Assembly (NCBI RefSeq): GCF_032191835.1
Contig: NC_083237.1
Span: 682,001-746,000, forward strand
Length of the DNA stretch: 64,000 nucleotides
Source: Heteronotia binoei
Lineage: Eukaryota
Direction: 5' to 3'
Each line of letters starts with the position of its first letter. The stretch's first letter is position 1. The notes beneath the pieces are model-generated. The model made no database searches and was not told where the DNA came from. It saw only the letters and a program-made list of their open reading frames with translations. Positions 3,301 through 39,875 of the stretch are shown here, one piece after another. The translations under genes and the position numbers were made by a program.

Positions 3301-6300
3301 TTGCTGTTTGGCCAAAGGCCAGGTTGCTTTAGGACCTGCATCAGGCTGCGGGGGGGGGGGGGGGGGGGGCGGGGGGAGGTTGGGACGGGCCTTCTGAGGT
3401 CCTGCCTGCCATCTCCCTCGGCTCCCTGGGGCTTCCCCAGCAGCAAGACTCCCCTCTCCCCTGACGCAAGAAGGGCTGGTGATGCTTCAGCCTGCATTCC
3501 TCCCAACCCCTCCCCCTTCCTCCCTAGAACTTCGTGCTGCTCCGAGAGCGACCAGAGGATGTGGCCCCCAAGCCCCTCAAGAAGGCCATGGACTACTCAT
3601 CCTCCAGCGAGGAAATGGACTCCAGCGAAGAAGAAGAGGAGGAGGAGGAGGCCGAGGGGGAGCGCTCCGACGCTGGCACGGACACCCCAGGGGCCAGGTG
3701 AGGGCAGTGTTGGCACCGACCTGCTGGGTGTTTTGTAGAAACCCACTTTCTGCTCGCTGTGATGAGCTCTGGCCAGGTTCTCAGAAATCCCAAGGAAACG
3801 ATACAAGAGGTCCAGGTTTCATAGAATCATAGAGTTGGAAGGGACCTCCAGGGTCATCTAGTCCAGCCCCCTGCACATTGCAGGAACTTCAGAAATGCCT
3901 TCCCCCCACACATACATCCCCAGTGACCCCTGCAGGCTCCAAGCCCCAAAATGGCAAAAAACCTCCAGGATCCCTGGGGCCAAACCGGCCTGGAGAAAAA
4001 CTGCTGCCTGACCCCAAAATGGCAACAGCATTTCTTGGGCACGTAAGAAAGAACCACAAGAATTATGTACTGATGCAGCCCTTCCTGCCCTCCTCCTCAT
4101 GAGCTGCCTCATTCACAGGATCTTCGTTGCTGTCAGGTGGCCATCGAGCCTCTCCTTAAAAACCTCCAGGGAAGGAGAGCCCACCACCTCCCGAGGAGGA
4201 AGCCTGTTCCGCTGAGGAACTGCTCTGACTGTCAGGAAGTTCTTCCTCATGTTTAGCTGGAAACTCTTGATTTAATTTCATCCGATTGGTTCTGGGGCAA
4301 CAGGAAAAAGCCCTTCTGGGGCAACAGGAAAAAGTTTGCTTACGAGGAAATTTTTGATAAAGTATCAAATGTACCAAAAATGGAGACTAAGCTCCCATCA
4401 GCACAGCGAAGCTTGCCAGAATCCGAGACCACAACGAGGCATCTTGTACCCGAAGTGCTGGCTGCCAGTCAAGTAATCCTTCGTTAAGCTACCCCAAGCT
4501 CTTGAATGTGCCCAGCCGTTCTGCAGTTGGCTTCCTGGGTGGGGGGGGGGGCTCAGGCTTTGGAGATAAGTGTTAGGGGATGTTAGGCGTGCAGGAACCT
4601 TTCCCTGCCTCCCGTTCCCAGGGCTCAGTACGGGGGGGAGAGGACTGGCAGTGCCCCAGTGGTTTCAGAAAGAGAGAACTCTGTGGAAACCATTTACTGA
4701 AGGTTAAAGCCACATGCAGAAACCCTTCAAGAATTTAGTTTGCAGAATATATTAATCCAAAACCCACTACTTAAGAACCTGGTGCCCGGTGATTTTATAA
4801 AGGATCTCTTTGGTGGCTCTGACTCCAGACCCATGACAAGGGGGTTGGCTCAGAACAACCAGGAACCGCAGTAAAACCACACAGTAAGCACCTCTTTCCA
4901 TCCCCAGGAGCCAAGGGAACAGTCAGATCTGTTGAACAAAGCAGGAGTCAAGTGGCACCGTTAAGACCAAAGACCAACCACGTTTTATTCAGAACGTAAG
5001 CTTTTGTGTGCTCTCTAAGCACACTTCATCACACTTCATCGTCTGATACCTGATCCCCTTGTCTGATGAAGTGTGCTTAGAGAGCACACGAAAGCTTACG
5101 TTCTGAATAAAACGTGGTTGGTCTTCAAGGTGCCACTTAACTTCTGTTTTGTTCAGCTGCTTCAGACCAACATGGCTGCCCTCTTGGATCTAGTCAGATC
5201 TGTGATGAGCATCTGACATATTTGACAAACCAGCCCCTCTTATAGAGGGTGGCCATCGGGGGTGAGCGGTCCTGGAGACACACACTGGATTGTGGGGTGC
5301 CTCAGGGAGCAGTTCTCTCCCCGATGTTGTTCAACATCTATATGCGCCCCCTTGCCCAGATTGCCCGGCGGTTTGGGCTGGGTTGCCATCAATATGCAGA
5401 TGACACCCAGCTCTATCTGTTAATGGACGGACGGCCCGACTCCGCCCCAGGGAACCTCGACCGGACTTTACAGGCTGTTGCAACGTGGCTTAGGCTGAGT
5501 GGGCTGAAGTTGAACCCAGCGAAGACAGAGGTCCTTTGTGTGGGTCGCGACGCTCTGGGAGGGGGAATAGCTCTCCCGGCCTTCGACGGTGCGCCATTGA
5601 AAGCAGCGCACCAGGTAAAGAGCCTGGGTGTTCTACTGGAGCCTTCATTATCCATGGAGGCCCAGATAGCAGCCACTGCCAAGTCAGCATTCTTCCACCT
5701 GAAGCGGGCAAGGCAGTTGGCCCCTTTCCTTGAGCGCCGGGACCTCGCAACAGTGATCCATGCAACGGTCACCTCAAGATTGGACTACTGTAATGCCCTC
5801 TACTTGGGGCTACCTTTGTGCCGGACCCGGAAGCTGCAGCTAGTGCAGAACGCGGCGGCCAGGCTGTTGTTGGGACTCCCGAAATGGGAACATATACGGC
5901 CGGGGCTACGTGGACTGCACTGGCTGCCGATTATATACCGGGTCCAGTGCAAAGTGTTGGTCATTACCTTTAAAGCCTTATATGGCCGAGGACCCGCCTA
6001 CCTGAGGGACCGTCTTTCCCCATACGAACCCCAGAGAGCACTGAGGTCAGCCGGGAAAAATCTAATGGCTATCCCTGGACCGAAAGAGATTAAACATCAA
6101 AATATCAGAGCACGGGCCTTTTCAACCGCGGCCCCTGCCCTATGGAACCAACTCCATGAGGAGGTGTGGGCCCTGCGGAACCTTGACCAGTTCCGCAGGG
6201 CCTGCAAGACCACCCTTTTTAAACTTGCTTATTCAGACTGCTAAAGAAGGCTGTTAAATAAGGATCCGCCAATGCGGCTTAAAGACCTAGACCGCTGTGT

Positions 6301-22704: not shown

Positions 22705-27559
<4,855 letters not shown>

Positions 27560-27779
27560 GCAGAGGGCAGCGGCCTCCCCTCCCCTCCCCTCCCAGAAGA
27601 GCTTCCCAAACCTGGCCAGCCCAAGCATGCAGCGACTCAGCAAGGCTGCCAAGGGCTGGTGCCCCCCTCACCGGGTCCCACAGAAGAGGCGCTGTGACCC
27701 CAGCCTGCCCGCTTCGGCCTCCGCCCCCGGATCCTCCTGCGACCTTGTCTCTCGTCTGCGGGGCCCCTCACCCCTCCTG

Positions 27780-28480
27780 TTGAACATAGATGAATATGAA
27801 CATCTGAAGCTGCCTTCTACTGAATCAGACCCCACCCCCGTCCATCAAAGCCAGTCTTGTCTACTCAGACTGGCAGCGGCTCTCCAGGGTCTCCAGCTGA
27901 GGTTTTTCATGCCTCTTTGCCTGGACCCTTTTTAGTTGGAGATGCCGGGGATTGAACCTGGGTCCTTCTGCTTACCAAGCACATGTTCTACCTTTGAGCC
28001 ACCATCCCTCCCTTAAAACCAGGTTCAAATGAACATATATGAACACATGAGGCTGCCTTCTACTGAATCAGACCCTCCTTGGTCCATCAAAGTCAGTCTT
28101 GTCTACTCAGACTGGCAGCGGCTCTCCAGCTGAGGTTTTTCATGCTTACTTGCCTGGACCCTTTTTAGTTGGAGATGCCAGGGATTGAACCTGGGTCCTT
28201 CTGCTTACCAAGCACATGTTCTACCTTTGAGCCACCATCCTTCCCTTAAAACCAGGTTCAAATGAACATATATGAACCTACGAAGCTGCCTTCTACTGAA
28301 TCAGAACCCCCCCCCCCCCACGCCCTCAAAGTCAGTATTGTCTGCTCAGACTGGCAGCGGCTCTCCAGGGTCTCAAGCGGATTTTCACGCCTATTTGCCT
28401 GGACCCTTTTTAGTTGCAGGTGCCGGGGATTGAACCTGGGACCTTCTGCTTCCCAAGCACATGTTCTGCCGCAGGGTGGG
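27780..28480 (-). mobile_element. Three head-to-tail copies of a tRNA-derived SINE (Squam2-like, tentative)
   Basis: Units start at about 27780, 28031 and 28263, each reading tgaacata...gctgccttctactgaatcaga...gggattgaacctggg. Confidence 0.85.
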
Positions 28481-29711
28481 CAGAGGTGCTTCAAATCAGG
28501 ATATTCTTCAAATCAGGGTCATCCATTCGAATGGATGACCCTGGTTCCCCAAAGCCCAAGAGGCAGCACTGCAGATTCTCCTCAGCCTCTCTCCCCACCC
28601 CCTTCTTCGGGGCTGGCATGAGGCCTCCCCCTCCCACTCCGCTGGCCTGCAAGGGGGTGGGGGTGGGATTTGGCTGGACTCCCTCCAGAGGGCATCCCAT
28701 TCGCTGCTGGCCCTCCTGAGGCCAGGCAAGGAAATCAGGGAGTGCCAAGACAGGAAGAGACTTTAACTCCCCTCACATGACTGGGTAAACAGGTGCTTGA
28801 GTCACTGTAGAAATGCGGCCCCTGGACAGCATAAAGGAACAGTCTGGCCCCAGAGCCAACCAGAGGGGCAAGATCTTGGACTTGGGCCTGGGTGAGGGCT
28901 GAAGCCTGATACAAAGTGTGGAGGCTGCTGCACTGAAACGGAACCACGACTACGATGGTATTAATCTCAGAACATCTGATCTCAAAAGAGGGAACTTTAT
29001 AGAACTAAGGGGACTAGTTAGAAGGAAGCTAAAAGGGAAACTCAAGATCTAATCCGTAGCGGATGCTTGGAGATTATTTATATATATAAATGTAAACTGT
29101 GATAATTGGCGTGTGTGTGTGCGTGTTTAAAAATGCACTTCAAACCACACTAACGAAAGGCGAGCAGAATACATCCCTCAGTTTAAGAGAGGCGCTGCCA
29201 GGTCTGAAAGGGTGCCTAAATGGTTAACGACCCATGTAGAGGAAGCCCAAAAAAGCAAAAATGGCTTCTTGGCAAACGTGGAAAATCAGCCCCAATGGTG
29301 TGAAGAGAAGTGAGGCCAGTGCAAGCTAATGGTCAGAAAAGAGAATTTGACCAGATTGCCAAAAAAATCAAGGCAAACATTTCTTTAAATAGATCCAAAC
29401 CAGGACTCTTCCCAGAAAAGCTGTTGAGCCTTTGGCTGACCACCAAATAAAAAGGATTGCTGAAGGAAGATGGGGAAACGGCAAAGAAGCTAACGGAATT
29501 CTTTGCATCTGTGTTTACTGGGAAAGTGTGAGGCGCGTACCCAATCTACAGCCAGTATTTTAGGAAGGGAGCCTGAAGAACTAAGTCAAATTAAGGCAGC
29601 AAAATGAAGTCCTAAACCAAAGATTTCAGGTTTTCATGGCTGGTAACATCATTAGGGTTTGTAGAATCTTTCAGGCTCAAGTGCCGTGTTCTACTGGAGA
29701 AAGTTTTTCTT

Positions 29712-29752
29712 CCAGACGTTTCGTTCTCAGCTGCGGAGAACATCCTCAGTGG
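29712..29752 (-). ncRNA. Minimal type I hammerhead ribozyme motif (minus-strand copy)
   Basis: Exact reverse complement of 29953-29993; predicted GUC cleavage between 29715 and 29714. Confidence 0.8.
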
Positions 29753-29952
29753 CGTTGCAGCCGGAGCAGGCGCTCTGACCTTCTTGGCTGCTGTATATTG
29801 AGTGAGGCCAGGGCTGCTGGAGAGCTGCTATTTCTAGGCTGGAGGGGTGTGGTGAAAGGGCAATTGGTTTGTGGATGTGCCCATTATTTGGTGGGGCTTC
29901 CTGGAAGGGTAGTGATAAGGAAACTGGCTGTTGAATGTGACCATATGCAACG

Positions 29953-29993
29953 CCACTGAGGATGTTCTCCGCAGCTGAGAACGAAACGTCTGG
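29953..29993 (+). ncRNA. Minimal type I hammerhead ribozyme motif (plus-strand copy)
   Basis: Stem I CCA/TGG, CTGAGGA 29956-29962, T, stem II GTTCTC/GAGAAC, GAAA 29983-29986, C, GTC 29988-29990. Confidence 0.8.
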
Positions 29994-32377
29994 AAGAAAA
30001 ACTTTCTCCAGTAGAACACGGCACTTGAGCCCGAAAAATTCTACAAACCCTAGGAAGTCCTAAACCGCTCGGAGAAACTAAAAATCAGCAAGTCTCCAGG
30101 TCCTGATTGATGGTGTATACCAGAGTTCCTAAGGAACTCAAGTGAGAGTGTTGATCTACAAACCCACACACGTGACTTGTCGCCAAAATCAGCCTGCACG
30201 CCAGAAGACTGGGGAGTAAAATGTGACACCACTATTGAAAAAGAGGCCCAGATGAGAACCTGGAAATTCCAGCCCAGTTAACCTAATCTCTGTCCCAGGC
30301 AAGTTTGTAGAAACTGTAATCAAAGACAGCCTTGTTAAGCACCTGGAGGGACAAAGCCTGCTGAGGGAAAGGCAGCCTGGCTTCTGCAAAGGGAAGTCCT
30401 GCCTCACCAACCTTTTTGGAGATCTCTGAGAAAGTGAACAGGCATGTATACAACGGTGACCTGGCGGACACTGCATACTTGGACTTTCCAAAGTCTTCTG
30501 ACAAGATCCCTCACTCCTGAGTAAACGTAGCAGTCGAGGGATAGGAGGGTGGGGTCTCTTGTGGGTTTTTAAATTTCACTCCATTTTTACCCTTACTTTC
30601 TCCCCAGTGGGGACCCAAACCAGCCCACATCATTCGCTCCTCACAAGATCCCTAAGGGGTAGGGTTCGGCTGAGAGTATGTGACTGGTACAAGGTCACCA
30701 GGCAGGCCTCCATGGCAAAGTGCAGGCTTGAACTTGGGTCTCCCACACCCTAGTGACACTCGAGGCTCTACCCCATGTGGGACAAAAGATTGGTTAACTG
30801 ACAGGACGCAGAGAGCAGGAGTAAAAAGACCATTCCCCTCCTGAAAGGAAAGGAGGGGAGGGGGGGTTCCCACAAGGATCAGCACTGAGACCGCTGCTAT
30901 TTACATTTGTTCAAAAATGATGTCGCTGGGGGTGAGCAGTTCCGCAGCCAAATTTGTGGATGACGCAAATATTATTCGGGATGGGGAATCCCAAGGCTGA
31001 CTGTGAAGAGCTCCAGGAGGACGCCCACAAATTGGGTCTGGGGGCAGCCATGGGGCAGGAGACATTCCACACTCGAGTGCCAGGTGAGGCACAACTGTGG
31101 GCATGTGCTGAAGGTGGCTGAACTGAGACGCTGGGCTGTAGCGGACACAGTTCAACCCCTGGAATGCAGCAGAGGCAGCCATGCCGGGCGGCGGGGGAGG
31201 GGGGGGGAGGGTGGTTAGGAAAAGGACGGACAATAAATTGGCTGGTGTTGTGACGCCCCTTGTATAGATCTGTGGTGCGGCCTGACACAGAATATTGTGT
31301 GCAATGAGTTCTGGGCACCACACAATTGCAGAGCTGAAAGGCGGCAAAAGAGGGCAACCAGGGGGGGGCAAGGAGAAGGTGACTGCGGGCATCAAGAGAC
31401 GGGCATCACTGTGTGTGTGTGGGGGGGGGGGAGTGTCACTTTCATCCAGACTTCTGGAACAGGAGGGCCCAGAAGAGCCGTCTCCCCTGCCTTTCCCCGC
31501 TGGCCTGCAAACACCCTTCAAGCAGGGCCACCATCTCCTGCCCGCCCAGAAGGTTTCCGTCCTGGCCAGTTGCCCCAACAGGAGAATGTGCAGGCAAGTC
31601 CAGCTCCCCATAGATGTGGCTCTGCTGTGACAATCGATGCCTCTTCTGCCTGAGGCTCGCAGCCCTCCGGCCCTTCAGCAGACACGGCACTCTCCTCTTG
31701 TGTGTGTGTGTGGGGGGGGGGCTGCCCTCCTTCTCCAGGGCCACGCAGCCATGGTCTTTTCTGCACCACCCCAAACCTGCTGGATGTCCCAAGGTCCGGT
31801 CAGAGCGGCCTCCTGCCTTCTTCCCCTTTCTGACACAGCATGACCTGTTCAGAAGGCACAGGGAGGCGTGGTCCTCCGGGGGGAAACAGCAGCGCTGCCA
31901 AGGCAAGAGCTGTAGAGAGGCGCCCTGCCCTCGCCTGCCTCCTCAACGCCCTCCTGTCCAAGCGCTGACCAGGCCTGGCCTGCTCAGTTTCCCCGCAGCC
32001 GGCCAGGCCGAGGCCTCCCCACTTGGGCCTGGTGCCAGCCAGCCGTCCAGTGCAGCCTCTCTGAGCGGAAAGCCCCAACCAGCCCCCACAGAACGACTTC
32101 CAAGCAGACGGCTGGATTCAGACCATGATTGGATTTACTAAGTTAAAAGCCAAGTGGGGGGAAGGGAGGGCCAGCCCCCAACCTGGGGGCCCCACAGAGG
32201 GAGGCGGTCCAGTTGGAGAGGGCACCTGGCCCCCCTTCCCCAGAAAATAAATTATCTCCTCTTCCCCCCCTCCAGTTCTTTCTTCATGATTGGCTAGATG
32301 CAATGACAGACACAGAGGGACACGCGGCCACGGTGGGTGGGCTCCTTGCCCCGCATGCCGCTCCCCGGATCCTGCCC

Positions 32378-34953
32378 TCAGGCACTGAGGAAGAACTTCC
32401 GGTAAAACTTGTTCATCTGTTCCAAGAAGATGAAGGTGAGGACTGTGTGGGGGCCCAGGCGGGCGTAGTAGGGGGTGAAGCCTTTCCACAGGCTGAAGAA
32501 GCCCTCGTAGCGAACCACCTTCACCAGCACGTCCTGCAAAGCCCGGCAGCCAGAGAGAAGCCAGGTGAGCTCAGCCTAGAACAGAGTCCTCTGCCCCCCC
32601 CAAGGGCCCAGTCAAGACCCTCCCCACCCATGAAGCAAGGTTGGGGGCTCCATGCCAGGAGGTCAAGATGGGTGCGGCTGGCACTGCCCTGGGGTGGCCC
32701 TGGCACTTGCGTGCCACCAAGAGGCAGAGTGGTCATACAATTGCTGCTCAAAGGCAAGAGAAGAAAAGAAGATAGAAGAAGATATTGGATTTGTATCCTG
32801 CCCTCCACTCCGAAGAGTCTCAGAGCGGCTCACAATCTCCTTTCCCTTCCTCCCCACGACAGACACCCTGTGAGGTAGATGAAGATATTGGATTTATATC
32901 CCGCCCTCCACTCCGAAGAGTCTCAGAGCGGCTCACAATCTCCTTTCCCTTCCTCCCCACAACAGACACCCTGTGAGGTAGACGAAGATATTGGATTTAT
33001 ATCCCGCCCTCCACTCCAAGGAGTCTCAGAGCAGCTCACAATTTCCTTTTCCTTCCTCCCCCACAACAGACACCCTGTGAGGTAGATGAAGATATTGGAT
33101 TTATATCCCGCCCTCCACTCCAAAGAGTCTCAGAGCGGCTCACAATCTCCTCCCCCCCCCACAACAGACACCCTTTGAGGTAGATGAAGATATTGGATTT
33201 ATATCCCGCCCTCCACTCCGAAGAGTCTCAGAGCGGCTCACAATCTCCTTTACCTTCCTCCCCCACAACAGACACCCTGTGAGGTAGTTGAAGATATTGG
33301 ATTTATATCCCGCCCTCCACTTCGAAGAGTCTCAGAGCGGCTCACAATCTCCTTTCCCTTCCTCCCCCACAACAGACACCCTGTGAGGTGGGTGGGGCTG
33401 AAGAGAGCTCTCACAGCAGCTGCCCTTTCAAGGACAACCTCTGCCAGAGCTCTGGCTGACCCAAGGCCATTCCAGCAGCTGCAAGTGGAGGAGTGGGAAT
33501 CAAACCCGGTTCTCCCAGATAAGAGTCCGCACACTTCACCATTACACCAAACTGGCTTTCCTGATGCGTCTCTGAGCCTCCAAGAAGTCCTGGTCCACCC
33601 CCCCCCAACCGGAGCTCTGGGGTGTCACCCTCCCACTCACCAGTCCATTCCGATACTCCGGCTTCCCGTCGATCATCCGCATGTTCTGAATCCTAGAGGC
33701 ACACAGAAGCCAAGTGAGAGAGGAAGCCAGCTCCCTGCCCAAGGAAGCTGCTTCTTCCGTCGCCCCAAATGCAGGACCCAGGGGAAATGCTGAAGCCCCC
33801 CTCCCCGGCTTTCCAGCACGCCCTCCTCTCTTCCTCCTGCCAGGGCCACCCTCTGCCCAGGCACAGCAGTCCCTGTTCTGTGGCCTTGCCTGGTCTTGGC
33901 GATGTCCACGGGCATGGAGGCAGCTGTCGTCACCAAGCCGCTGATCATGCTGGCGCAGAAGTGGCAGAAGATGTTGTCTCGGAAGTAGCCTGAAAGGAAG
34001 AGAGAGGAGGCCTCGGGCTCAGAGCGAACACAAGCATCTGTGACCCCAGAGAGAAGGGGGGGGGGAGACACCCTGCAGCACGAAGGGGAGCGGAAGGCCA
34101 ACAGAGGCACGCCCCCGGACACCCAGCCTAGGTGCGACACAACTCACCAGAATCCAGTAAGAACTGCTTGGACTGGGAGTAAGAAGCCAGCTGGGCGGCA
34201 TTAACCACCACTGCCCGAGCCATGGTGGGCACACAGCCCTAGGGCAGAAGCAAAGGAGTCAGGGCAGGAAGGCTGCCCACTGTGCCTGCCCCAGAAGGCC
34301 CTTTGGCTCCAAGAGAAGCCCGCCAGGCAGGCCCCAAAGGAACCAGGCAGGAACCCTCTCAGGTAAGTTCCTTTGGGCTCATTCAACTCCTCCCCACAGC
34401 TCCTGCTGGCCTCCAGAAGCCAGAGGCCCTGCTGAGTGAGGGGCTCTGGCCCCAGAGCAGAATCCAAGAATGTGTGTGGTGGGCCCCAGGAGGCGGCTCT
34501 GTCTCTAAGGGGCTTCCTGGGCATAGGCTGCTGCCCCCTCCCTCTCCCCAACGGCTGAGGCCCCCCACTCGCCCTGGGCACCTACTCTCCAGAGCGTGGG
34601 CACCCCCTCCTCACGGGTGATCCTCAGCAGTGCGTTGAAGACGTTGGCATACCCTCTCCTCTGGTCCAGGGGAAGCCTGAAAGGGGGAGAGGGTGAGACT
34701 CTGGGCACAGGCCCAGGCCCCTCCCCCCCTGACCTCGCACCACCCACCTGCCATCAGCCGTCATCCGGATGAGCGCCACCTCGGCTGGCGTGCCCACGAA
34801 GGCCCCCACAGCCCCCGCCGTCATCCCAATCAGGGCCTTGACAAAGAAGTTGGGGGCCGCCCGTCCTCCCCCGTCAGCTTCTCAAAGAGGATGGTGTAGA
34901 TGCCCAGGCGGGTGGTGGTGTAGGTGGCCTGGCGCAGCAGCCCAGCAGACAGC
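32378..34953 (-). CDS. SLC25A11: Mitochondrial 2-oxoglutarate/malate carrier, exons 3-8
   Basis: Exons (plus-strand coordinates): 34748-34953, 34586-34676, 34148-34238, 33890-33989, 33641-33692, 32378-32533. Peptides LSAGLLRQATYTTTRLGIY, GTPAEVALIRMTADGR, SMPVDIAKTRIQNM and PYYARLGPHTVLTFIFLEQM. One missing base in the G run at about 34852. Exons 1-2 are not visible. Confidence 0.96.
32778..33558 (-). repeat. Squam3-like SINE whose tail is amplified as 6 x about 103-bp tandem units
   Basis: gaagatattgg at 32778, 32881, 32984, 33088, 33186 and 33290; the last unit continues into the SINE body and head. Confidence 0.9.
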
Positions 34954-35163: not shown

Positions 35164-35263
35164 NNNNNNNNNNNNNNNNNNNNNNNNNNNNNNNNNNNNN
35201 NNNNNNNNNNNNNNNNNNNNNNNNNNNNNNNNNNNNNNNNNNNNNNNNNNNNNNNNNNNNNNN
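35164..35263. other. Assembly gap (100 N)
   Basis: Run of N. Confidence 1.
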
Positions 35264-35499
35264 GGCTCCGCGGCGCTGCCAAGGTCGACTCGGCAGTTTG
35301 AAAACCGGCATTTTTTATTTCGGCTTTTATGAAGAATGATTACCGTTATTTTTAACCCGCCTTTCTCAAGGGAACCTAAGGCGGATTAGCCTTCCAGACT
35401 TACGAGAAGCCCCGAAACACCTGGAGGGAGGGAGAGGCTCTGAGGAGGGGGGCCAGGACTCGCCCTCTGGCTGCCCCACACGCCCCCCCGGGCCTAGCT

Positions 35500-36425
35500 G
35501 AAGGGGGAGGGGAGGAGAGAGAAAGGGAGGAAGAGGGGGGAGGAGAGAAGGGGAGGGGAAGCGGGGAGGGAGAGGAAGGGAGGGGGAGGAGAGAGGAGGG
35601 GGAGGGGAGAGGGGGAAGAGGAGAGAGAAGGGGAGGAAAGCGGGGAGGAGAAGAGAGGGGGAGGAGTAGGAGAGGAAGGAGGGGAGAGAGGAAGAGGAGA
35701 GAGAAGGGGAGGAGTAGGAGAGGAAGGGGGGAGGAGGTGGGAGAGAGGAGGGGAGGAAAGAGGAAGGGGGGAGGAGGAGGAGAGAGGGGAGAAGGAGAGG
35801 GGGGAGAGAGAAGGGGAGGAGTAGGAGAGGAAGGAGGGGGGAGGAGGGGAGAGGGGAAGAGGAGAGAGAAGGGGAGGAGAGGAGGGAAGCGGGGAGGAGG
35901 TGGAGAGAGGAGAGAGAAGGGGAGGAAAGCGGGGAGGAGAGAGGAAGGGAGAAGGGGGGAGGAGGAGGAGAGAGGGAGAGAAGGAGGGGGGAGAGAGAAG
36001 GGGAGGAGTAGGAGAGGAAGGAGGGGAGAGGGGGAAGAGAAGAGAGAAGGGGAGGAGAGAGGAAGGGAGAAGGGGGGAGGAGGAGGAGAGAGGGAGAGAA
36101 GGAGGAGGGGGAGAGAGAAGGGGAGGAGTAGGAGAGGGGGAAGAGGAGAGAGAAGGGGAGGAGAGAGCAAGGGAGAAGGGGGGAGGAGGAGGAGAGGAGG
36201 GGGGAGAGAGAAGGGGAGGAGTAGGAGAGGGGGAAGAGGAGAGAGAAGGGGAGGAGAGGAGGAAAGCGGAGAGGAGAGAGCAAGGGAGAAGGGGGGAGGA
36301 GGAGGAGGAGAGAAGGAGGGGGGAGAGAGAAGGGGAGGAGTAGGAGAGGAAGGAGGGGAGAGGGGGAAGAGAAGAGAGAAGGGGAGGAAAGCGGGGAGGA
36401 GAGAGGAAGGGAGAGGAGGAGGAGG
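35500..36425 (+). repeat. About 0.9-kb polypurine (G/A) low-complexity tract
   Basis: Almost purely G and A on the plus strand, with recurring gagagaaggggaggagtaggagagg units. Confidence 0.95.
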
Positions 36426-36616
36426 GCTCCCACGAGGGAAGGAGGGCGGGCGGGGCTGGCCCGGCCGAGGTCTCCCGGCAGCAGCTGCGGGAGGGAGAAG
36501 GGGGGGCTCGAGGGTCCCTCTCCGCGGCTCCTCCCGCCCCTGGCAGCTCCTCTGAGGGAGGCCCGCCCCCTGCACTTCTGGGCACCGCCCTCTGTCCTCC
36601 CTTCCTTCCTTCGCAG

Positions 36617-36915
36617 GAGCTGAACCTGCGCATCTGGCGAGAGCCTGCCGGGGCTTTGCACACCCGAGGAGGAGGCTGCAGTGGCCTCGCTCCGCCCCCA
36701 GCTAAGCGGCCGCCCGAGAAGCAGGAAGAGCTGGCTTGCTTCGGAGGAGGAGGAGGAGTCTCGCGAGAAGATCTCCCAGCCATGTTGCAGCGCAGGGGGT
36801 TGTAAACAGAAGCCGCCCCCTCCCTGCCCGCCGCCCTGCTGCAAGCCCCCAAGGAGGAGAAGCCGGCTCGGAGGGCCCCTCCCGTGGGGGCGGGCAGAGG
36901 GACCCCCTGGGGGAG
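36617..36915 (+). other. Candidate RNF167 5' UTR exon
   Basis: ttccttccttcgcag| acceptor and gag|gtgagt donor in CpG-rich DNA upstream of the exon that starts at 39842. Confidence 0.35.
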
Positions 36916-39875
36916 GTGAGTGAAGCCGCGGAGGGGGGGGGGGGGCTTGCAGCCGGCGTGCCCCCTGGGTCTCCTCCTGGCGGGGCGGAAAGGGCAGGGG
37001 CGGGGGGAGCGAGGGGCCAGCCGGGGTTGGGGGGGGGCGCCGAGAGGCCCTGGCCCCTCGAAGGAAGCAGCCCTCTCCCGTTTGCTTCCCTCGGGAAACC
37101 GGCGGTGCCCGGTGTGGGGGGCGAGGGGTTGCTGGGTGGAGCCCCAGCTTTGGGAGGCACCTTCCTCCCCCCCTCCCTGACTGCAAAGATGGCAGGTCCG
37201 ACCCGAGAGGGGATCCCTCCTAGTGGGGGTCCAATTTGGGGCTCTCTCCAGGCAGTCCGACGGGGCCAAAGGCGCGGTCTGTGGGGCACCCCATAGCAGG
37301 GGCCTCGTTATCGCCCAGCAGCCTCCCTGGGGTTCTTACAAGGAAGGAAGGGGGCCATTTGCCCCTCCTGTGGGACACCCACCAAGTCCCCGCTTTCCTT
37401 TCCCGCTCTGGCCCAGAGAAAGCAGTGCCCCCCTCCACCCAACACACACAGGCGCCCGTCTCCATGGGAATGGGGGCGCTTTCTTCTGGCCAGTAACTTG
37501 GCAGTTGCCAGCTCAGGCACCAAACCTGTTCAGGCAGTCAACCCTGGGCACCGACCTGCGGATGCCTCCAGGTCCTGGGTGGGAAACACAGAGCAGCTTC
37601 TTGGCTTCTCTGTGCTTCTTCCTTCCGCTTCTGGGTGCTAAAAGACCCCCGGAGGGCCTGGGAGGGGCCTGGCTGGCAGAGGCCTGAGCTGCTCTTGTGC
37701 TTTTGGCTGCCCCTTTGCAGTCCGTCCTGGTGGGATGCCGTCTTGCCCTTGGGCCTGACCATGAGCCAGCGGGGGCATTGAAGAAGACATCAGCCCCACC
37801 GGTACTGGAGGCGCAGCAGAGAGGGAAGCCTGCTTTGTCGGGGTGAGTAGGACCCGGGTTCAGGGGCACGGCGATCCAAGCACGTAGCCAAGTGCTGCCC
37901 ACGGGGCTGAAGAGGGCTGTTTTTCTGCTCTCCTGGCGCAGCTGAGCAACGCCTGTGTTTGCCCTTGGGGGCTGTGCTCCCGGGGTTGGGCAAGGAAAGT
38001 CTCTCAGAGTGAAATGGCTCAGCACCTTTGATCCCTGGCAGTCAGAGGGGGAAGGGGCTGATGGAGCCTGCTGCCAAGGAGGAGGGGGCTTGGAGTTGGC
38101 CTCGTGCTCTGCCCTGGTGGAGCAACGCTCGGCTTGCTGACCTGAGTTCTCCTGCTTGGCCTGGCTTCCAGGCACTGCCCAGCACCCTTTTGCTCCTTGG
38201 TGCAAGAGGCTCCAATTCAACCCCTCCCCCCCCGGGGGGGTCTCTTGGGCAAACAGTTTTGTCTCTGCCTAGCCTGTCAGCATAGGTATTGGGAGGGCCA
38301 AAGGAGGCTAGAGGTTGCCTCTCTCTCTCCTGCTTTTGGGGGCAGTTTTAATTGGCACAGCACCCCCTGCAAATACACTATGAGAACTGATGCCTTGCCA
38401 ATCCAAGTGCCAACCCAGCCCTGCTCTGTCTCTTTCTGGAGGAGGTTGGCTTTGGGAGTCCAACCAGAGTTGGCAGCCCTTGGCTGGCTGCCTGGCATGC
38501 CTCAGAAGGGTGAGGGGGTTGTCCCCCACCCTCCTAAGCTCTCTGGGAAGGTTACTTTGCTTTCTGAAAGGCTGGCTTCTTGTTTCCTGTGGCAAAGAGT
38601 CCCCTCCCTGCCTCTGCCTTGTTCCTTGCAGCCTCCAGCATTTACATCAGCAACCTCCCCCCCCCTCCCGCTGCTGTGTGGGCTGGAGGGCACAGCAGAC
38701 GGGAAAGACAGCTGCTGGGAATGTTCCTTGATTTGCTGAAACAGTCCCCAGATAGAGGAGCCCTGGGGAGCAGAAGGAGGGCAGGTGCCAGTGGGCATTT
38801 TTCTCAGAGCCCAGGTGCCCTCTACCTGCCTGCACAGGACTCTCTCTTGGCTTTGTCCCTGCTGGCCCAGGGAGGGGTCTGAGAGGGGGCAGCTTGGGTT
38901 TTATTTATGTGTTCATGTACTTCCTTCCAGCACCTCACTCATTTCTCCTCAGAAGAGGAGATCTGAAGTCTCCTCTTCTCTCTCGTAACCCCACAGCAGC
39001 CCTGCGAGGCCAGCTGAGAGAACGTGACTGACCTAAGGGCTGACTGACCCAAGCCAGCTTCTGTGCCATGAGTGGGGATTCAGGCCTGCCTCACGGGAGG
39101 CTTCTGAGCATGTGCCGAGGGCTTCTTGCCACAGGGGAGGTGTCCCATTTCTGTCTGTCACTTTTTTGTCCTGTGCATCCAGAAAGGATCGTAGGGCAGC
39201 ACATGTGATCTTCCCTGCCTCCGTCCACTCCCCCTCAACGACAGCCCTGTGGGGTAGATAGAGCTGAAAGAAAGCGACTGGCCCCAGCTCAGCCAGAGAG
39301 CGGGAGGGCCAAGAGGAGCCGTGGGCCTCAGCTGCGCAGAAATCAGGCCTCTCCAAAAATCCCATCTGGGAGCAGTCATATGACCGCCCTGTGCCTGTTT
39401 CTGCCTCTGGACACCCGCAGAGAAGAGTCCTGCTGGAGCGAATGGCCCGGGGCAGCAGTTCCCAAGGGGAGTGGGTGCTGAGGAGGAGCTCTGCCTCTGC
39501 CAACTGCCTTCCCATCTGGATGCCACGCTCCTTTCGGGACCGCTCCCCCCGCCCCGGGATCCGAGGGCCTTGCGCATGTGATTGCAGTTTGCCCCTCCAG
39601 CCACCCTCCCCCGCCCCCATTTAGTAAACAGATTTCACCAGCATTGGAGGGGCTTCTAAACCCTCTCTTTAGATCCACTGTGTTGGCCTGAAGCAACAAC
39701 AAAGTTTGCATCCAGTGGCATCTTTCAGAACAACAACATTTAATTCTGGGTACAAGTTCTTGTGTGCTGTCTCTCCTCTGTGGGAAGCTCTGCTCAGCCT
39801 GCCCTGATGACTCCTGGCTTCCTTCTGTGTCCTCCGTGTAGGAGCCTCCTGCCGACATCTCACCCAGCAGCTGCG

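What the first reader, a model, noticed from the sequence alone, without database searches (positions are those of the whole stretch)
29606..30066. Double-hammerhead hairpin element: an intact ribozyme motif on each strand, between two convergent genes
Seen: a 435-bp insertion with a 13-bp TSD splits an old CR1. It has 107-bp inverted arms (105/107 identical) around a 186-nt spacer, and each arm holds an identical CUGAGGA-stem II-GAAAC-GUC motif. Established: Penelope-like retroelements carry minimal hammerheads whose loopless palindromic stem III (here ACGU) works as a dimer, and truncated copies often have an inverted pLTR. Inference: the element lies about 2.4 kb past the CHRNE stop and 2.7 kb past the SLC25A11 stop, so read-through from either gene would meet a sense ribozyme. 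It could act as a bidirectional cleavage/termination element, or the arms could fold into a 107-bp dsRNA (ADAR or Dicer substrate) that masks the ribozyme. I saw no plus-strand AATAAA after CHRNE until 29446, inside CR1 debris.
Basis: partly seen in the sequence, partly recalled or inferred. Interest (0 to 1): 0.82.

Follow-up and report, generated by a model that had tools for sequence, protein, structure and literature searches.

The report
Truncated Penelope retroelement with inverted hammerhead arms
This is an ordinary dead insertion of a very abundant lizard Penelope-like retrotransposon, two pieces of the element's end joined head to head, each carrying the family's usual minimal hammerhead motif, and nothing found here suggests it serves the two neighbouring genes.

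Summary

It is a 5'-truncated copy of a young, high-copy Penelope-like element (PLE). The sense strand is the window's minus strand. The right arm is the inverted 5' partial copy that PLE integration often adds.

The exact core occurs 6,333 times in this genome (13,947 with up to 3 mismatches). About a third of the first 100 cores listed sit in the same outward-facing pairs. All 16 pairs examined are single insertions with 12-15-bp duplications (two only partly resolved). Each has the 34-nt "tail" at one end only, as here. Published PLE work describes these features, including paired minimal hammerheads on opposite strands.

The host-function idea is not supported:
- Each transcript would carry only one sense ribozyme, which is a dimer-dependent, protein-assisted type.
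- The 107-bp hairpin dominates the predicted fold.
- RNA-seq shows no reads in the unique flanks, and reads over the insert come from other copies. Depth was shallow.

This scan has noted the same structure at least 17 times elsewhere in this genome. One follow-up reached the same verdict.

The parts
29606..29618 (.). Left copy of the 13-bp target-site duplication
   Evidence: family D3, 100% identical to 30054-30066
29619..29652 (-). 34-nt PLE 'tail': the extreme 3' end of the element, present at this end only
   Evidence: body reaches reference 1666; the inverted arm stops at 1631. Searches show the same one-sided tail in 16/16 other paired insertions. The tail is described in PMC8557442 and PMC11167929.
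29653..29759 (-). Left inverted-repeat arm, part of the element body in sense orientation on the minus strand. It holds the hammerhead core and the element's ORF start (ATG at 29741-29743 on the minus strand, at the start of stem II).
   Evidence: ATG position read. The same layout is reported for the Anolis Poseidon element in PMC11167929.
29715..29749 (-). Minimal hammerhead core, minus strand: CUGAGGA, bulged U, 6-bp helix II with a 7-nt loop, GAAA, loopless palindromic helix III (ACGU), cleavage triplet GUC. Predicted cut between 29715 and 29714.
   Evidence: Features match the PLE min-HHR description in PMC4209133. The exact 35-mer occurs 6,333 times in the genome.
29760..29945 (-). The 'spacer': remnant of the 3' end of the PLE ORF (C-terminal, Q/P-rich coding region after the GIY-YIG domain), truncated at its 5' end
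   Evidence: collinear with reference 1340-1524 of longer copies. One search shows the ORF of a longer copy running through this region.
29946..30052 (+). Right arm: an inverted, 5'-truncated second copy of the element end (reference 1525-1631), without the tail
29956..29990 (+). Minimal hammerhead core, plus strand, identical to the minus-strand one. Predicted cut between 29990 and 29991.
30054..30066 (.). Right copy of the 13-bp target-site duplication
29445..29605 (+). Upstream half of the decayed CR1-type LINE ORF2 that the insertion split. It contains the only + strand AATAAA after the nAChR gene (29446-29451).
30067..30330 (+). Downstream half of the split CR1-type LINE ORF2 (KSPGPD and PGN..PV.L.SVPGK motifs, with frameshifts and stops)

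Best explanation
The 435-bp insert is a dead, 5'-truncated copy of a young, very abundant Penelope-like retrotransposon (reverse transcriptase plus GIY-YIG endonuclease). The element's sense strand is the window's minus strand. From the left it comprises a 34-nt tail, the 107-nt segment with the hammerhead and the ORF start, and 186 nt of the ORF's 3' end. The right arm is an inverted second copy of the 107-nt segment without the tail. The likely origin (inferred) is that the element's protein nicked both strands of the target 13 bp apart, and each 3' end primed reverse transcription of element RNA from one of two adjacent internal start sites. The two cDNAs were then joined head to head. That would give two outward-pointing element ends, only one with the tail, flanked by a 13-bp duplication. 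The hammerhead on each strand is simply the family's own motif copied twice. In the element's life cycle it sits at the junction of tandem units and is a weak, dimer-dependent, protein-assisted ribozyme. At this locus it most likely does nothing: the copy is neutral debris inside an older CR1 fragment between two convergent genes.
For: Family and abundance:
- At least 40 scored copies are 97-98% identical, out of 2,139 first-look candidates.
- The exact 35-nt core occurs 6,333 times, and 13,947 times with up to 3 mismatches. The reversed control gives 0.
- Copies share one 3' end and have scattered 5' ends.

PLE identity:
- A longer copy has a 512-aa ORF with an RT (YVDD; Pfam RVT_1 E 3.5e-6) and a GVY...YIG motif.
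- Its nearest Atlas clusters carry HTH_animal + RVT_1 + GIY-YIG at score 0.96.
- The ORF's ATG sits at the start of stem II, as in the Anolis Poseidon element (PMC11167929).

Routine structure:
- 32 of the first 100 listed cores form 16 (-,+) pairs within 1 kb, and none form (+,-) pairs.
- All 16 are single insertions of 261-1,123 bp. Fourteen have clear 12-15-bp duplications (two are only partly resolved).
- Junctions differ between copies, and one end is tailed while the other is not.

Literature:
- PLE min-HHRs have the bulged base, G10.1-C11.1, a palindromic 15.2-16.2 and a long helix II. They occur as pairs 100-700 bp apart on opposite strands, and have low, dimer-dependent activity (PMC4209133).
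- An inverted 5'-truncated copy and a one-sided 30-40-bp tail are standard PLE features (PMC8557442).
- The protein cuts and extends both strands and uses two RT start sites. The ribozyme needs the protein, and no RNA-seq ends were found at the cleavage site (PMC11167929).

No host use seen:
- RNA-seq depth is zero at 28542-29483 and 30112-31995 in three runs.
- Reads on the insert run off at 29618 into heterogeneous sequence and at 29944 into the PLE body. They carry non-window letters at 29637, 29673 and 29886, so they come from other copies.

Fold: the 107-bp hairpin forms at -270 and -260 kcal/mol. The hammerhead region alone is no more stable than shuffles (z 0.08).
Against: - RNA sampling was shallow. 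About 6% of each run was read, and the carrier gene's own 3' UTR reached only 0.25-0.9x. Low-level read-through cannot be excluded, and the tissues are unknown.
- The ribozyme was not scored by any covariance model (Rfam: no hit), and catalysis cannot be tested here.
- Pfam support for the endonuclease is weak: only T5orf172, which I take to be a GIY-YIG-clan family, at E 0.058.
- Presence or absence at the orthologous site in related species and in other individuals was not testable.
- The two-strand priming origin of the inverted arm is inferred from in vitro work on another lizard's element, not shown for this family.
Confidence: 0.92

Rival explanations
1. Host-exapted bidirectional terminator: read-through transcripts from the nAChR-subunit gene (+) or SLC25A11 (-) meet a sense hammerhead, self-cleave, and the cut promotes termination.
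For: Each strand carries an intact core. The element lies between convergent genes, 2.4 and 2.7 kb past their stops. No canonical poly(A) hexamer occurs on the + strand before 29446.
Against: - This hammerhead type has a loopless 2-bp helix III and needs a second sense copy. A transcript of either strand holds one sense and one antisense copy.
- Published PLE hammerheads are inactive as monomers and need the element's protein.
- The 107-bp hairpin would outcompete the ribozyme fold.
- The AATAAA at 29446 lies before the insert.
- On the minus strand RNA-seq depth ends by about 31996, near an AGTAAA at 32134, 2 kb short of the element.
- Depth is zero in both unique flanks.
- The same structure occurs about 1,000 times genome-wide.
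Confidence: 0.02
2. Regulatory dsRNA source: when transcribed, the arms form a 107-bp duplex that is edited by ADAR or diced, affecting the neighbouring genes or innate sensing.
For: The predicted hairpin is very stable on both strands. Long inverted repeats in transcripts are known ADAR substrates (general knowledge).
Against: There is no evidence that this locus is transcribed. The A>G and T>C differences seen in reads are near-fixed and coincide with differences between copies, for example 29673, which is the left arm's private change. They are therefore not editing. Any such effect would be a generic by-product shared with about 1,000 other fold-back copies, not a property of this site.
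Confidence: 0.04
3. A distinct non-autonomous 'hairpin' element (mini-Penelope or retrozyme-like) that is itself copied as a unit, rather than an integration by-product.
For: Many paired copies are of similar size (about 320-360 bp), and 9 of 16 have their inner junction near reference position 1480-1487.
Against: Inner junctions differ between copies: the window has 1340/1525, others 1462/1495, 1515/1526, 736/1451 and so on. Which arm carries the tail also varies. Copies of one master hairpin would share one junction. Retrozymes need direct, same-strand ribozyme repeats, which is not the case here. The clustering near 1480 is more simply a preferred end of the RNA template (inference).
Confidence: 0.02

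Closest known systems
Penelope-like elements of the Penelope/Poseidon type, e.g. Poseidon of Anolis carolinensis (PAc; PMC11167929)
   Same: [quoted passage not shown]
- A minimal hammerhead whose stem II begins with the ORF's ATG.
- Insert ends lying about 90 and about 125 nt into the ORF, giving a 34-nt optional tail.
- 5' truncation, an inverted 5' partial copy and short target duplications.
   Different: Clade assignment within PLEs was not tested. Only a partial, degenerate ORF was examined, and no full-length copy was characterised. The window copy is a 327-bp end fragment plus a 107-bp inverted arm, with no coding capacity.
Minimal hammerhead ribozymes of metazoan PLEs (Cervera and De la Pena 2014, PMC4209133)
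   Same: - CUGANGA and GAAA boxes.
- An unpaired base between A9 and 10.1.
- A G10.1-C11.1 pair.
- A 6-bp helix II.
- A palindromic ACGU in place of a closed helix III.
- A GUC cleavage triplet.
- Paired motifs on opposite strands 100-700 bp apart are already reported.
   Different: Helix I here has only three clean pairs (UGG/CCA), against the usual 4-5. Activity is untested.
Retrozymes and tandem type-I hammerhead repeats that give circular RNAs (PMC7229834, PMC4918200)
   Same: A hammerhead carried by a retroelement-derived repeat.
   Different: Retrozymes have two same-strand ribozymes flanking a unit that is excised and circularised. Here the two motifs are on opposite strands, so no unit can be excised from one transcript.
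Host-gene hammerheads and cotranscriptional-cleavage terminators (e.g. the discontinuous hammerhead in rodent CLEC2 3' UTRs; from my own knowledge)
   Same: A hammerhead motif downstream of a gene's stop codon.
   Different: Those are full hammerheads with three stable helices, conserved at orthologous sites and lying within mapped transcripts. This one is a dimer-type minimal motif in a repeat copy, with no transcript evidence.

Membership tests
Penelope-like retroelement (EN+) | Single ORF with a reverse transcriptase followed by a GIY-YIG endonuclease | tested here: met
   A longer family copy (L033:6479-8017:-) has YVDD and Pfam RVT_1 at E 3.5e-6, below the curated cut-off. It has a GVY...(10 aa)...YIG motif and REAIEI-type residues, read directly. 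T5orf172, which I take to be a GIY-YIG-clan family, scores E 0.058. Atlas neighbours carry HTH_animal + RVT_1 + GIY-YIG at 0.96. Support for the endonuclease is moderate, not strong.
Penelope-like retroelement (EN+) | Insertion signature: variable 5' truncation with a common 3' end, an adjacent inverted 5'-truncated copy, a 30-40-bp tail at one end, and a target-site duplication | tested here: met
   The window copy and 16/16 other paired copies show one tailed and one untailed end. Duplications are 12-15 bp in 15 of the 17 (two only partly resolved). Described as standard in PMC8557442.
Penelope-like retroelement (EN+) | Tandem or partial-tandem arrangement forming pseudo-LTRs | tested here: inconclusive
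   One same-strand pair of cores lies 1.5 kb apart (C1:7713955 and 7715450), and there are two copies in L032. No full tandem was examined.
Hammerhead ribozyme (PLE minimal type I) | Conserved core: C3U4G5A6N7G8A9, G12A13A14, A15.1-U16.1, H17 | tested here: met
   CUGAGGA ... GAAA-C-G-U-C on both strands. The pattern finds 4 matches in the window against 0.66 expected by chance.
Hammerhead ribozyme (PLE minimal type I) | Helix II with G10.1-C11.1, a bulged base after A9, a palindromic 15.2-16.2, a short helix I | tested here: met
   Read against the criteria in PMC4209133. Helix II is GUUCUC/GAGAAC, the bulge is U, helix III is ACGU, and helix I has only 3 clean pairs. A second PLE family in the window (5063-5093) keeps the same architecture with different helix II and III sequences.
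Hammerhead ribozyme (PLE minimal type I) | Match to a curated covariance model | tested here: not met
   No Rfam hammerhead family hit at E<=10 over 28500-31200. This is expected because the motif lacks a closed helix III.
Hammerhead ribozyme (PLE minimal type I) | Self-cleavage | not testable with these tools
   No pile of read ends at 29715 or 29990 in family-wide RNA-seq at depth 8-32. This is weak evidence and is like the published negative for the Anolis element.
Host transcription-termination or RNA-processing element | Lies within host transcripts, with RNA ends at the site | tested here: not met
   Zero depth in the unique flanks 28542-29483 and 30112-31995 in three RNA-seq runs. Reads on the insert derive from other copies. 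Depth was shallow, so this is not a firm negative.
Host transcription-termination or RNA-processing element | Conserved at the orthologous site beyond neutral expectation | not testable with these tools
   No related vertebrate genomes are available. The arms show one private substitution each since insertion. 45% of the cores within 3 mismatches are exact. This is compatible with neutral decay.
Retrozyme | Two same-strand hammerheads flanking an excisable unit | tested here: not met
   The two cores are on opposite strands.

The most novel reading that the evidence does not exclude
The fold-back insertion, at this locus or across the roughly 1,000 like it, acts as a long perfect dsRNA hairpin whenever it is transcribed. 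It would then play in lizards the part that inverted Alu pairs play in primates, as an ADAR or dsRNA-sensor substrate. Here it would mark or limit read-through between the two convergent genes.
Probability: 0.03. Interest if true: 0.5.

Novelty: already known. Interest (0 to 1): 0.1.

Why it matters
For this locus it matters little: the finding can be filed as repeat annotation. The family-level picture has some use. This genome holds about 14,000 copies of one minimal hammerhead. It also holds on the order of a thousand fold-back insertions whose two ends always differ by the 34-nt tail. That is genomic evidence, from real integrations, consistent with the both-strand priming and two RT start sites reported in vitro for a lizard PLE. 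These copies will keep being flagged as 'double ribozymes' by any motif scan and should be masked as a class.

Tried and rejected
- **Rfam cmscan:** run at E<=10 over 28500-31200. It gave no hammerhead hit, only chance matches. I did not build my own covariance model because the family evidence made it unnecessary.
- **Hammerhead region alone:** folding gave no hammerhead-like minimum and z 0.08, as expected for a dimer-type motif.
- **Pfam on the endonuclease region:** only weak hits.
- **First pattern search:** Repeated successfully.
- **Sequencing runs:** the indexed holders were small metatranscriptome or reduced-representation runs with small shares. The useful data were three raw RNA-seq runs of the same species label.
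- **Read laying:** this was the only call allowed, so I could not test DNA runs for insertion polymorphism or sample RNA more deeply. I left the coding exons out of the laid stretch on purpose.
- **Dimer energy in trans:** not computed. The double-hammerhead is a kissing-type complex that nearest-neighbour cofolding cannot represent.
- **Large protein searches, structure prediction and complex prediction:** not run, because they would not change the verdict.
- **Hairpin as a separately propagating element:** considered and rejected because inner junctions differ between copies.
- **A>G differences in reads as editing:** considered and rejected because they match differences between copies.
Full report
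**1.
- The repeat finder gives a perfect 13-bp direct repeat at 29606-29618 and 30054-30066. It also gives inverted arms at 29653-29759 and 29946-30052 (107 nt, 98% complementary, 186 nt apart). The insert is therefore 29619-30053, which is 435 bp.
- The arms differ at two positions. Against other family copies, each arm carries one private change: a CpG transition in the left arm and a G-to-A in the right.
- Both arms hold an identical 35-nt core.
- The flanks translate to decayed CR1-type LINE ORF2 motifs on either side, so an old LINE fragment was split.
- A gamma/epsilon-type muscle acetylcholine-receptor subunit ends at 27557-27559 on the + strand. I did not separate epsilon from gamma; epsilon is suggested only by the neighbours.
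- A mitochondrial-carrier last exon ends at 32378-32380 on the - strand. Its C-terminus reads like SLC25A11 from my own knowledge.
- No AATAAA or ATTAAA occurs on the + strand between 27550 and 29446.
- Rfam's hammerhead models do not score the motif.

**2. It is one copy of a very large, young family.**
- Searching the window's own genome with the insert gave 2,139 first-look candidates. The 40 copies scored were nearly all 97-98% identical over positions 1-326 of the insert, the left arm plus spacer.
- Comparing the fetched copies with each other shows a common end just after the 34 nt that lie left of the left arm. On the other side the ends are scattered. This is the pattern of 5'-truncated, target-primed retroelement copies.
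- The element's sense strand is therefore the window's minus strand, and the 'spacer' is element body.
- A longer copy carries a 512-aa ORF with an RT (YVDD; Pfam RVT_1 E 3.5e-6) and a GVY...YIG endonuclease-type motif.
- Its nearest clusters in the ESM Atlas carry HTH_animal, RVT_1 and GIY-YIG.
- The ORF runs up to the hammerhead. A new ATG sits at the first bases of stem II, the layout reported for the Poseidon element of Anolis (PMC11167929).
- This is a Penelope-like element (PLE).

**3. The double-hammerhead hairpin is routine for this family.**
- The exact 35-nt core occurs 6,333 times in the genome, and 13,947 times with up to three mismatches. A reversed control gives none.
- Among the first 100 places listed, 32 cores form 16 pairs within 1 kb. 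All are in the same minus-then-plus order as in the window, and none are in the opposite order. Extrapolated, that is on the order of a thousand such loci.
- I fetched all 16 pairs. Each is a single insertion of 261-1,123 bp. Fourteen have a clear 12-15-bp target duplication; in two the repeat was only partly resolved.
- In each pair, one arm reaches the element's true end and the other stops about 34 nt short, exactly as in the window.
- Inner junctions differ from copy to copy, and the tail can be on the longer or the shorter arm. These are therefore independent integration events, not copies of one hairpin master.
- About a third of the first 30 loci also have an inverted partial copy at their 5' end.
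- This scan's own notes list 17 similar findings elsewhere in this genome. One was followed up with the same conclusion.

**4. All of this is already described.**
- Cervera and De la Pena (PMC4209133) defined the PLE minimal hammerhead. Its features are an unpaired base between A9 and 10.1, G10.1-C11.1, a long helix II, a short helix I and a palindromic 15.2-16.2 in place of helix III.
- They found these motifs in reptiles and noted pairs 100-700 bp apart on opposite strands. They measured no cleavage for monomers and weak cleavage for dimers.
- Craig et al. (PMC8557442) list three standard PLE features: high 5' truncation, an adjacent inverted 5'-truncated copy, and a 30-40-bp tail often at one end only.
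- Frangieh et al. (PMC11167929) showed several things for a lizard PLE protein:
  - It nicks and extends both DNA strands.
  - It starts reverse transcription at two adjacent internal sites that bracket the tail.
  - Its hammerhead cleaves only with the protein present.
  - RNA-seq shows no ends at the cleavage site.

**5. How it most likely arose and what it does.**
- *Shown:* the anatomy, the family membership and the recurrence.
- *Inferred:* both strands of the target were nicked 13 bp apart. Each nick primed a cDNA from element RNA, one from the distal start site (with the tail) and one from the proximal site (without). The two cDNAs were then joined head to head.
- The two arms were identical at insertion. 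Two differences in 107 bp suggest an age of some millions of years, with a very wide error (inference).
- At this locus the motif has no evident role.

**6. Why the host-function idea fails.**
- This ribozyme type needs a second sense copy to build helix III. A transcript of either strand has one sense and one antisense copy.
- The whole insert folds as a 107-bp hairpin at -270 and -260 kcal/mol (z -21 and -22). The ribozyme region alone is no better than shuffled sequence.
- Intact cores are not a sign of selection. 45% of the cores within three mismatches are exact. That corresponds to about 97.7% per-site identity, the same as the family overall.
- The single + strand AATAAA lies 160 bp before the insert.
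- In three RNA-seq runs of the same species label, depth is zero across 28542-29483 and 30112-31995.
- On the minus strand, depth stops by about 31996, near an AGTAAA at 32134.
- Reads do cover the insert at 8-32x, but 62-78% of them run off into other sequence. At 29618 that sequence is heterogeneous. At 29944 it is the PLE body that this truncated copy lacks.
- Those reads also carry non-window letters at 29637, 29673 and 29886. They come from other copies.

**7. Limits.**
- Only about 6% of each RNA run was read, and the carrier gene's own 3' UTR reached under 1x. Rare read-through is not excluded.
- Tissue is unknown.
- Polymorphism and orthologous presence could not be tested.
- Catalysis cannot be tested here.
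- I built no consensus and repaired no frame of the element.

**8. Verdict.** This is a correct and careful observation of an ordinary object: a truncated Penelope-like insertion with its usual inverted arm and usual minimal hammerheads. It is already known as a kind and of low interest at this locus.

Noticed in passing
window 4990-5125: A second fold-back insertion with a PLE-type minimal hammerhead from a different family. Its core at 5063-5093 (+) has CUGAUGA, a bulged A, a 7-bp helix II (GUGUGCU/AGCACAC) and a palindromic AGCU in place of helix III. The inverted copy to its left has lost core bases (GAAA to AAAA; no C before UGAUGA). Compared with the family studied here, it keeps the architecture while the helix sequences differ.
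   Followed up: partly
L034-L049 (G000 contig C1), inner junctions of paired copies: In 9 of 16 fold-back insertions both arms begin within a few bases of the same element position (reference about 1480-1487, some 50 nt upstream of the hammerhead core). This gives near-perfect palindromes of about 340 bp. RNA-seq reads also show heterogeneous run-offs at the equivalent window position (29794). It could mark a preferred 5' end of the template RNA, such as a transcription start. Not tested.
   Followed up: partly
L034-L049 and window 29619-30053: In 17 of 17 fold-back insertions one end carries the 34-nt tail and the other does not. I saw no tail/tail or bare/bare case. If the two start sites were chosen independently at each strand, this would be very unlikely. 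It suggests a coordinated, asymmetric use of the two RT start sites.
   Followed up: partly
window 29619-29944, in RNA runs X16-X18: The PLE family is transcribed in this species. Reads at 98% or more likeness cover the element end with first mates on both strands, and many continue into the ORF-bearing body of longer copies.
   Followed up: partly
window 27757-28541: Two related repeat copies lie just past the nAChR gene's stop (similar translated stretches at about 27531-27935 and 28262-28621). They have very high word depth in metatranscriptome contigs (over 10,000). They are probably an abundant SINE-like repeat. RNA-seq reads there run off into other sequence (28196).
   Followed up: no
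window 24300-25100: A G+C-rich tandem repeat (a repeated translated unit of about 30-35 residues in several frames) lies between nAChR-subunit exons, probably an intronic minisatellite.
   Followed up: no
window 32650-33100: Three tandem copies of a unit of about 100 bp (repeated translated stretch ...DEDIGFISRPPLRRVSERLTISFPFLP...) lie just upstream of the last SLC25A11 exon, on both strands' ORF lists.
   Followed up: no
window 35366-37269: A long low-complexity CT/GA-rich stretch gives 390-606-aa S/P/L-rich (one strand) and G/E/R-rich (other strand) open frames. A 100-base N run lies at 35164-35263 (left untouched).
   Followed up: no
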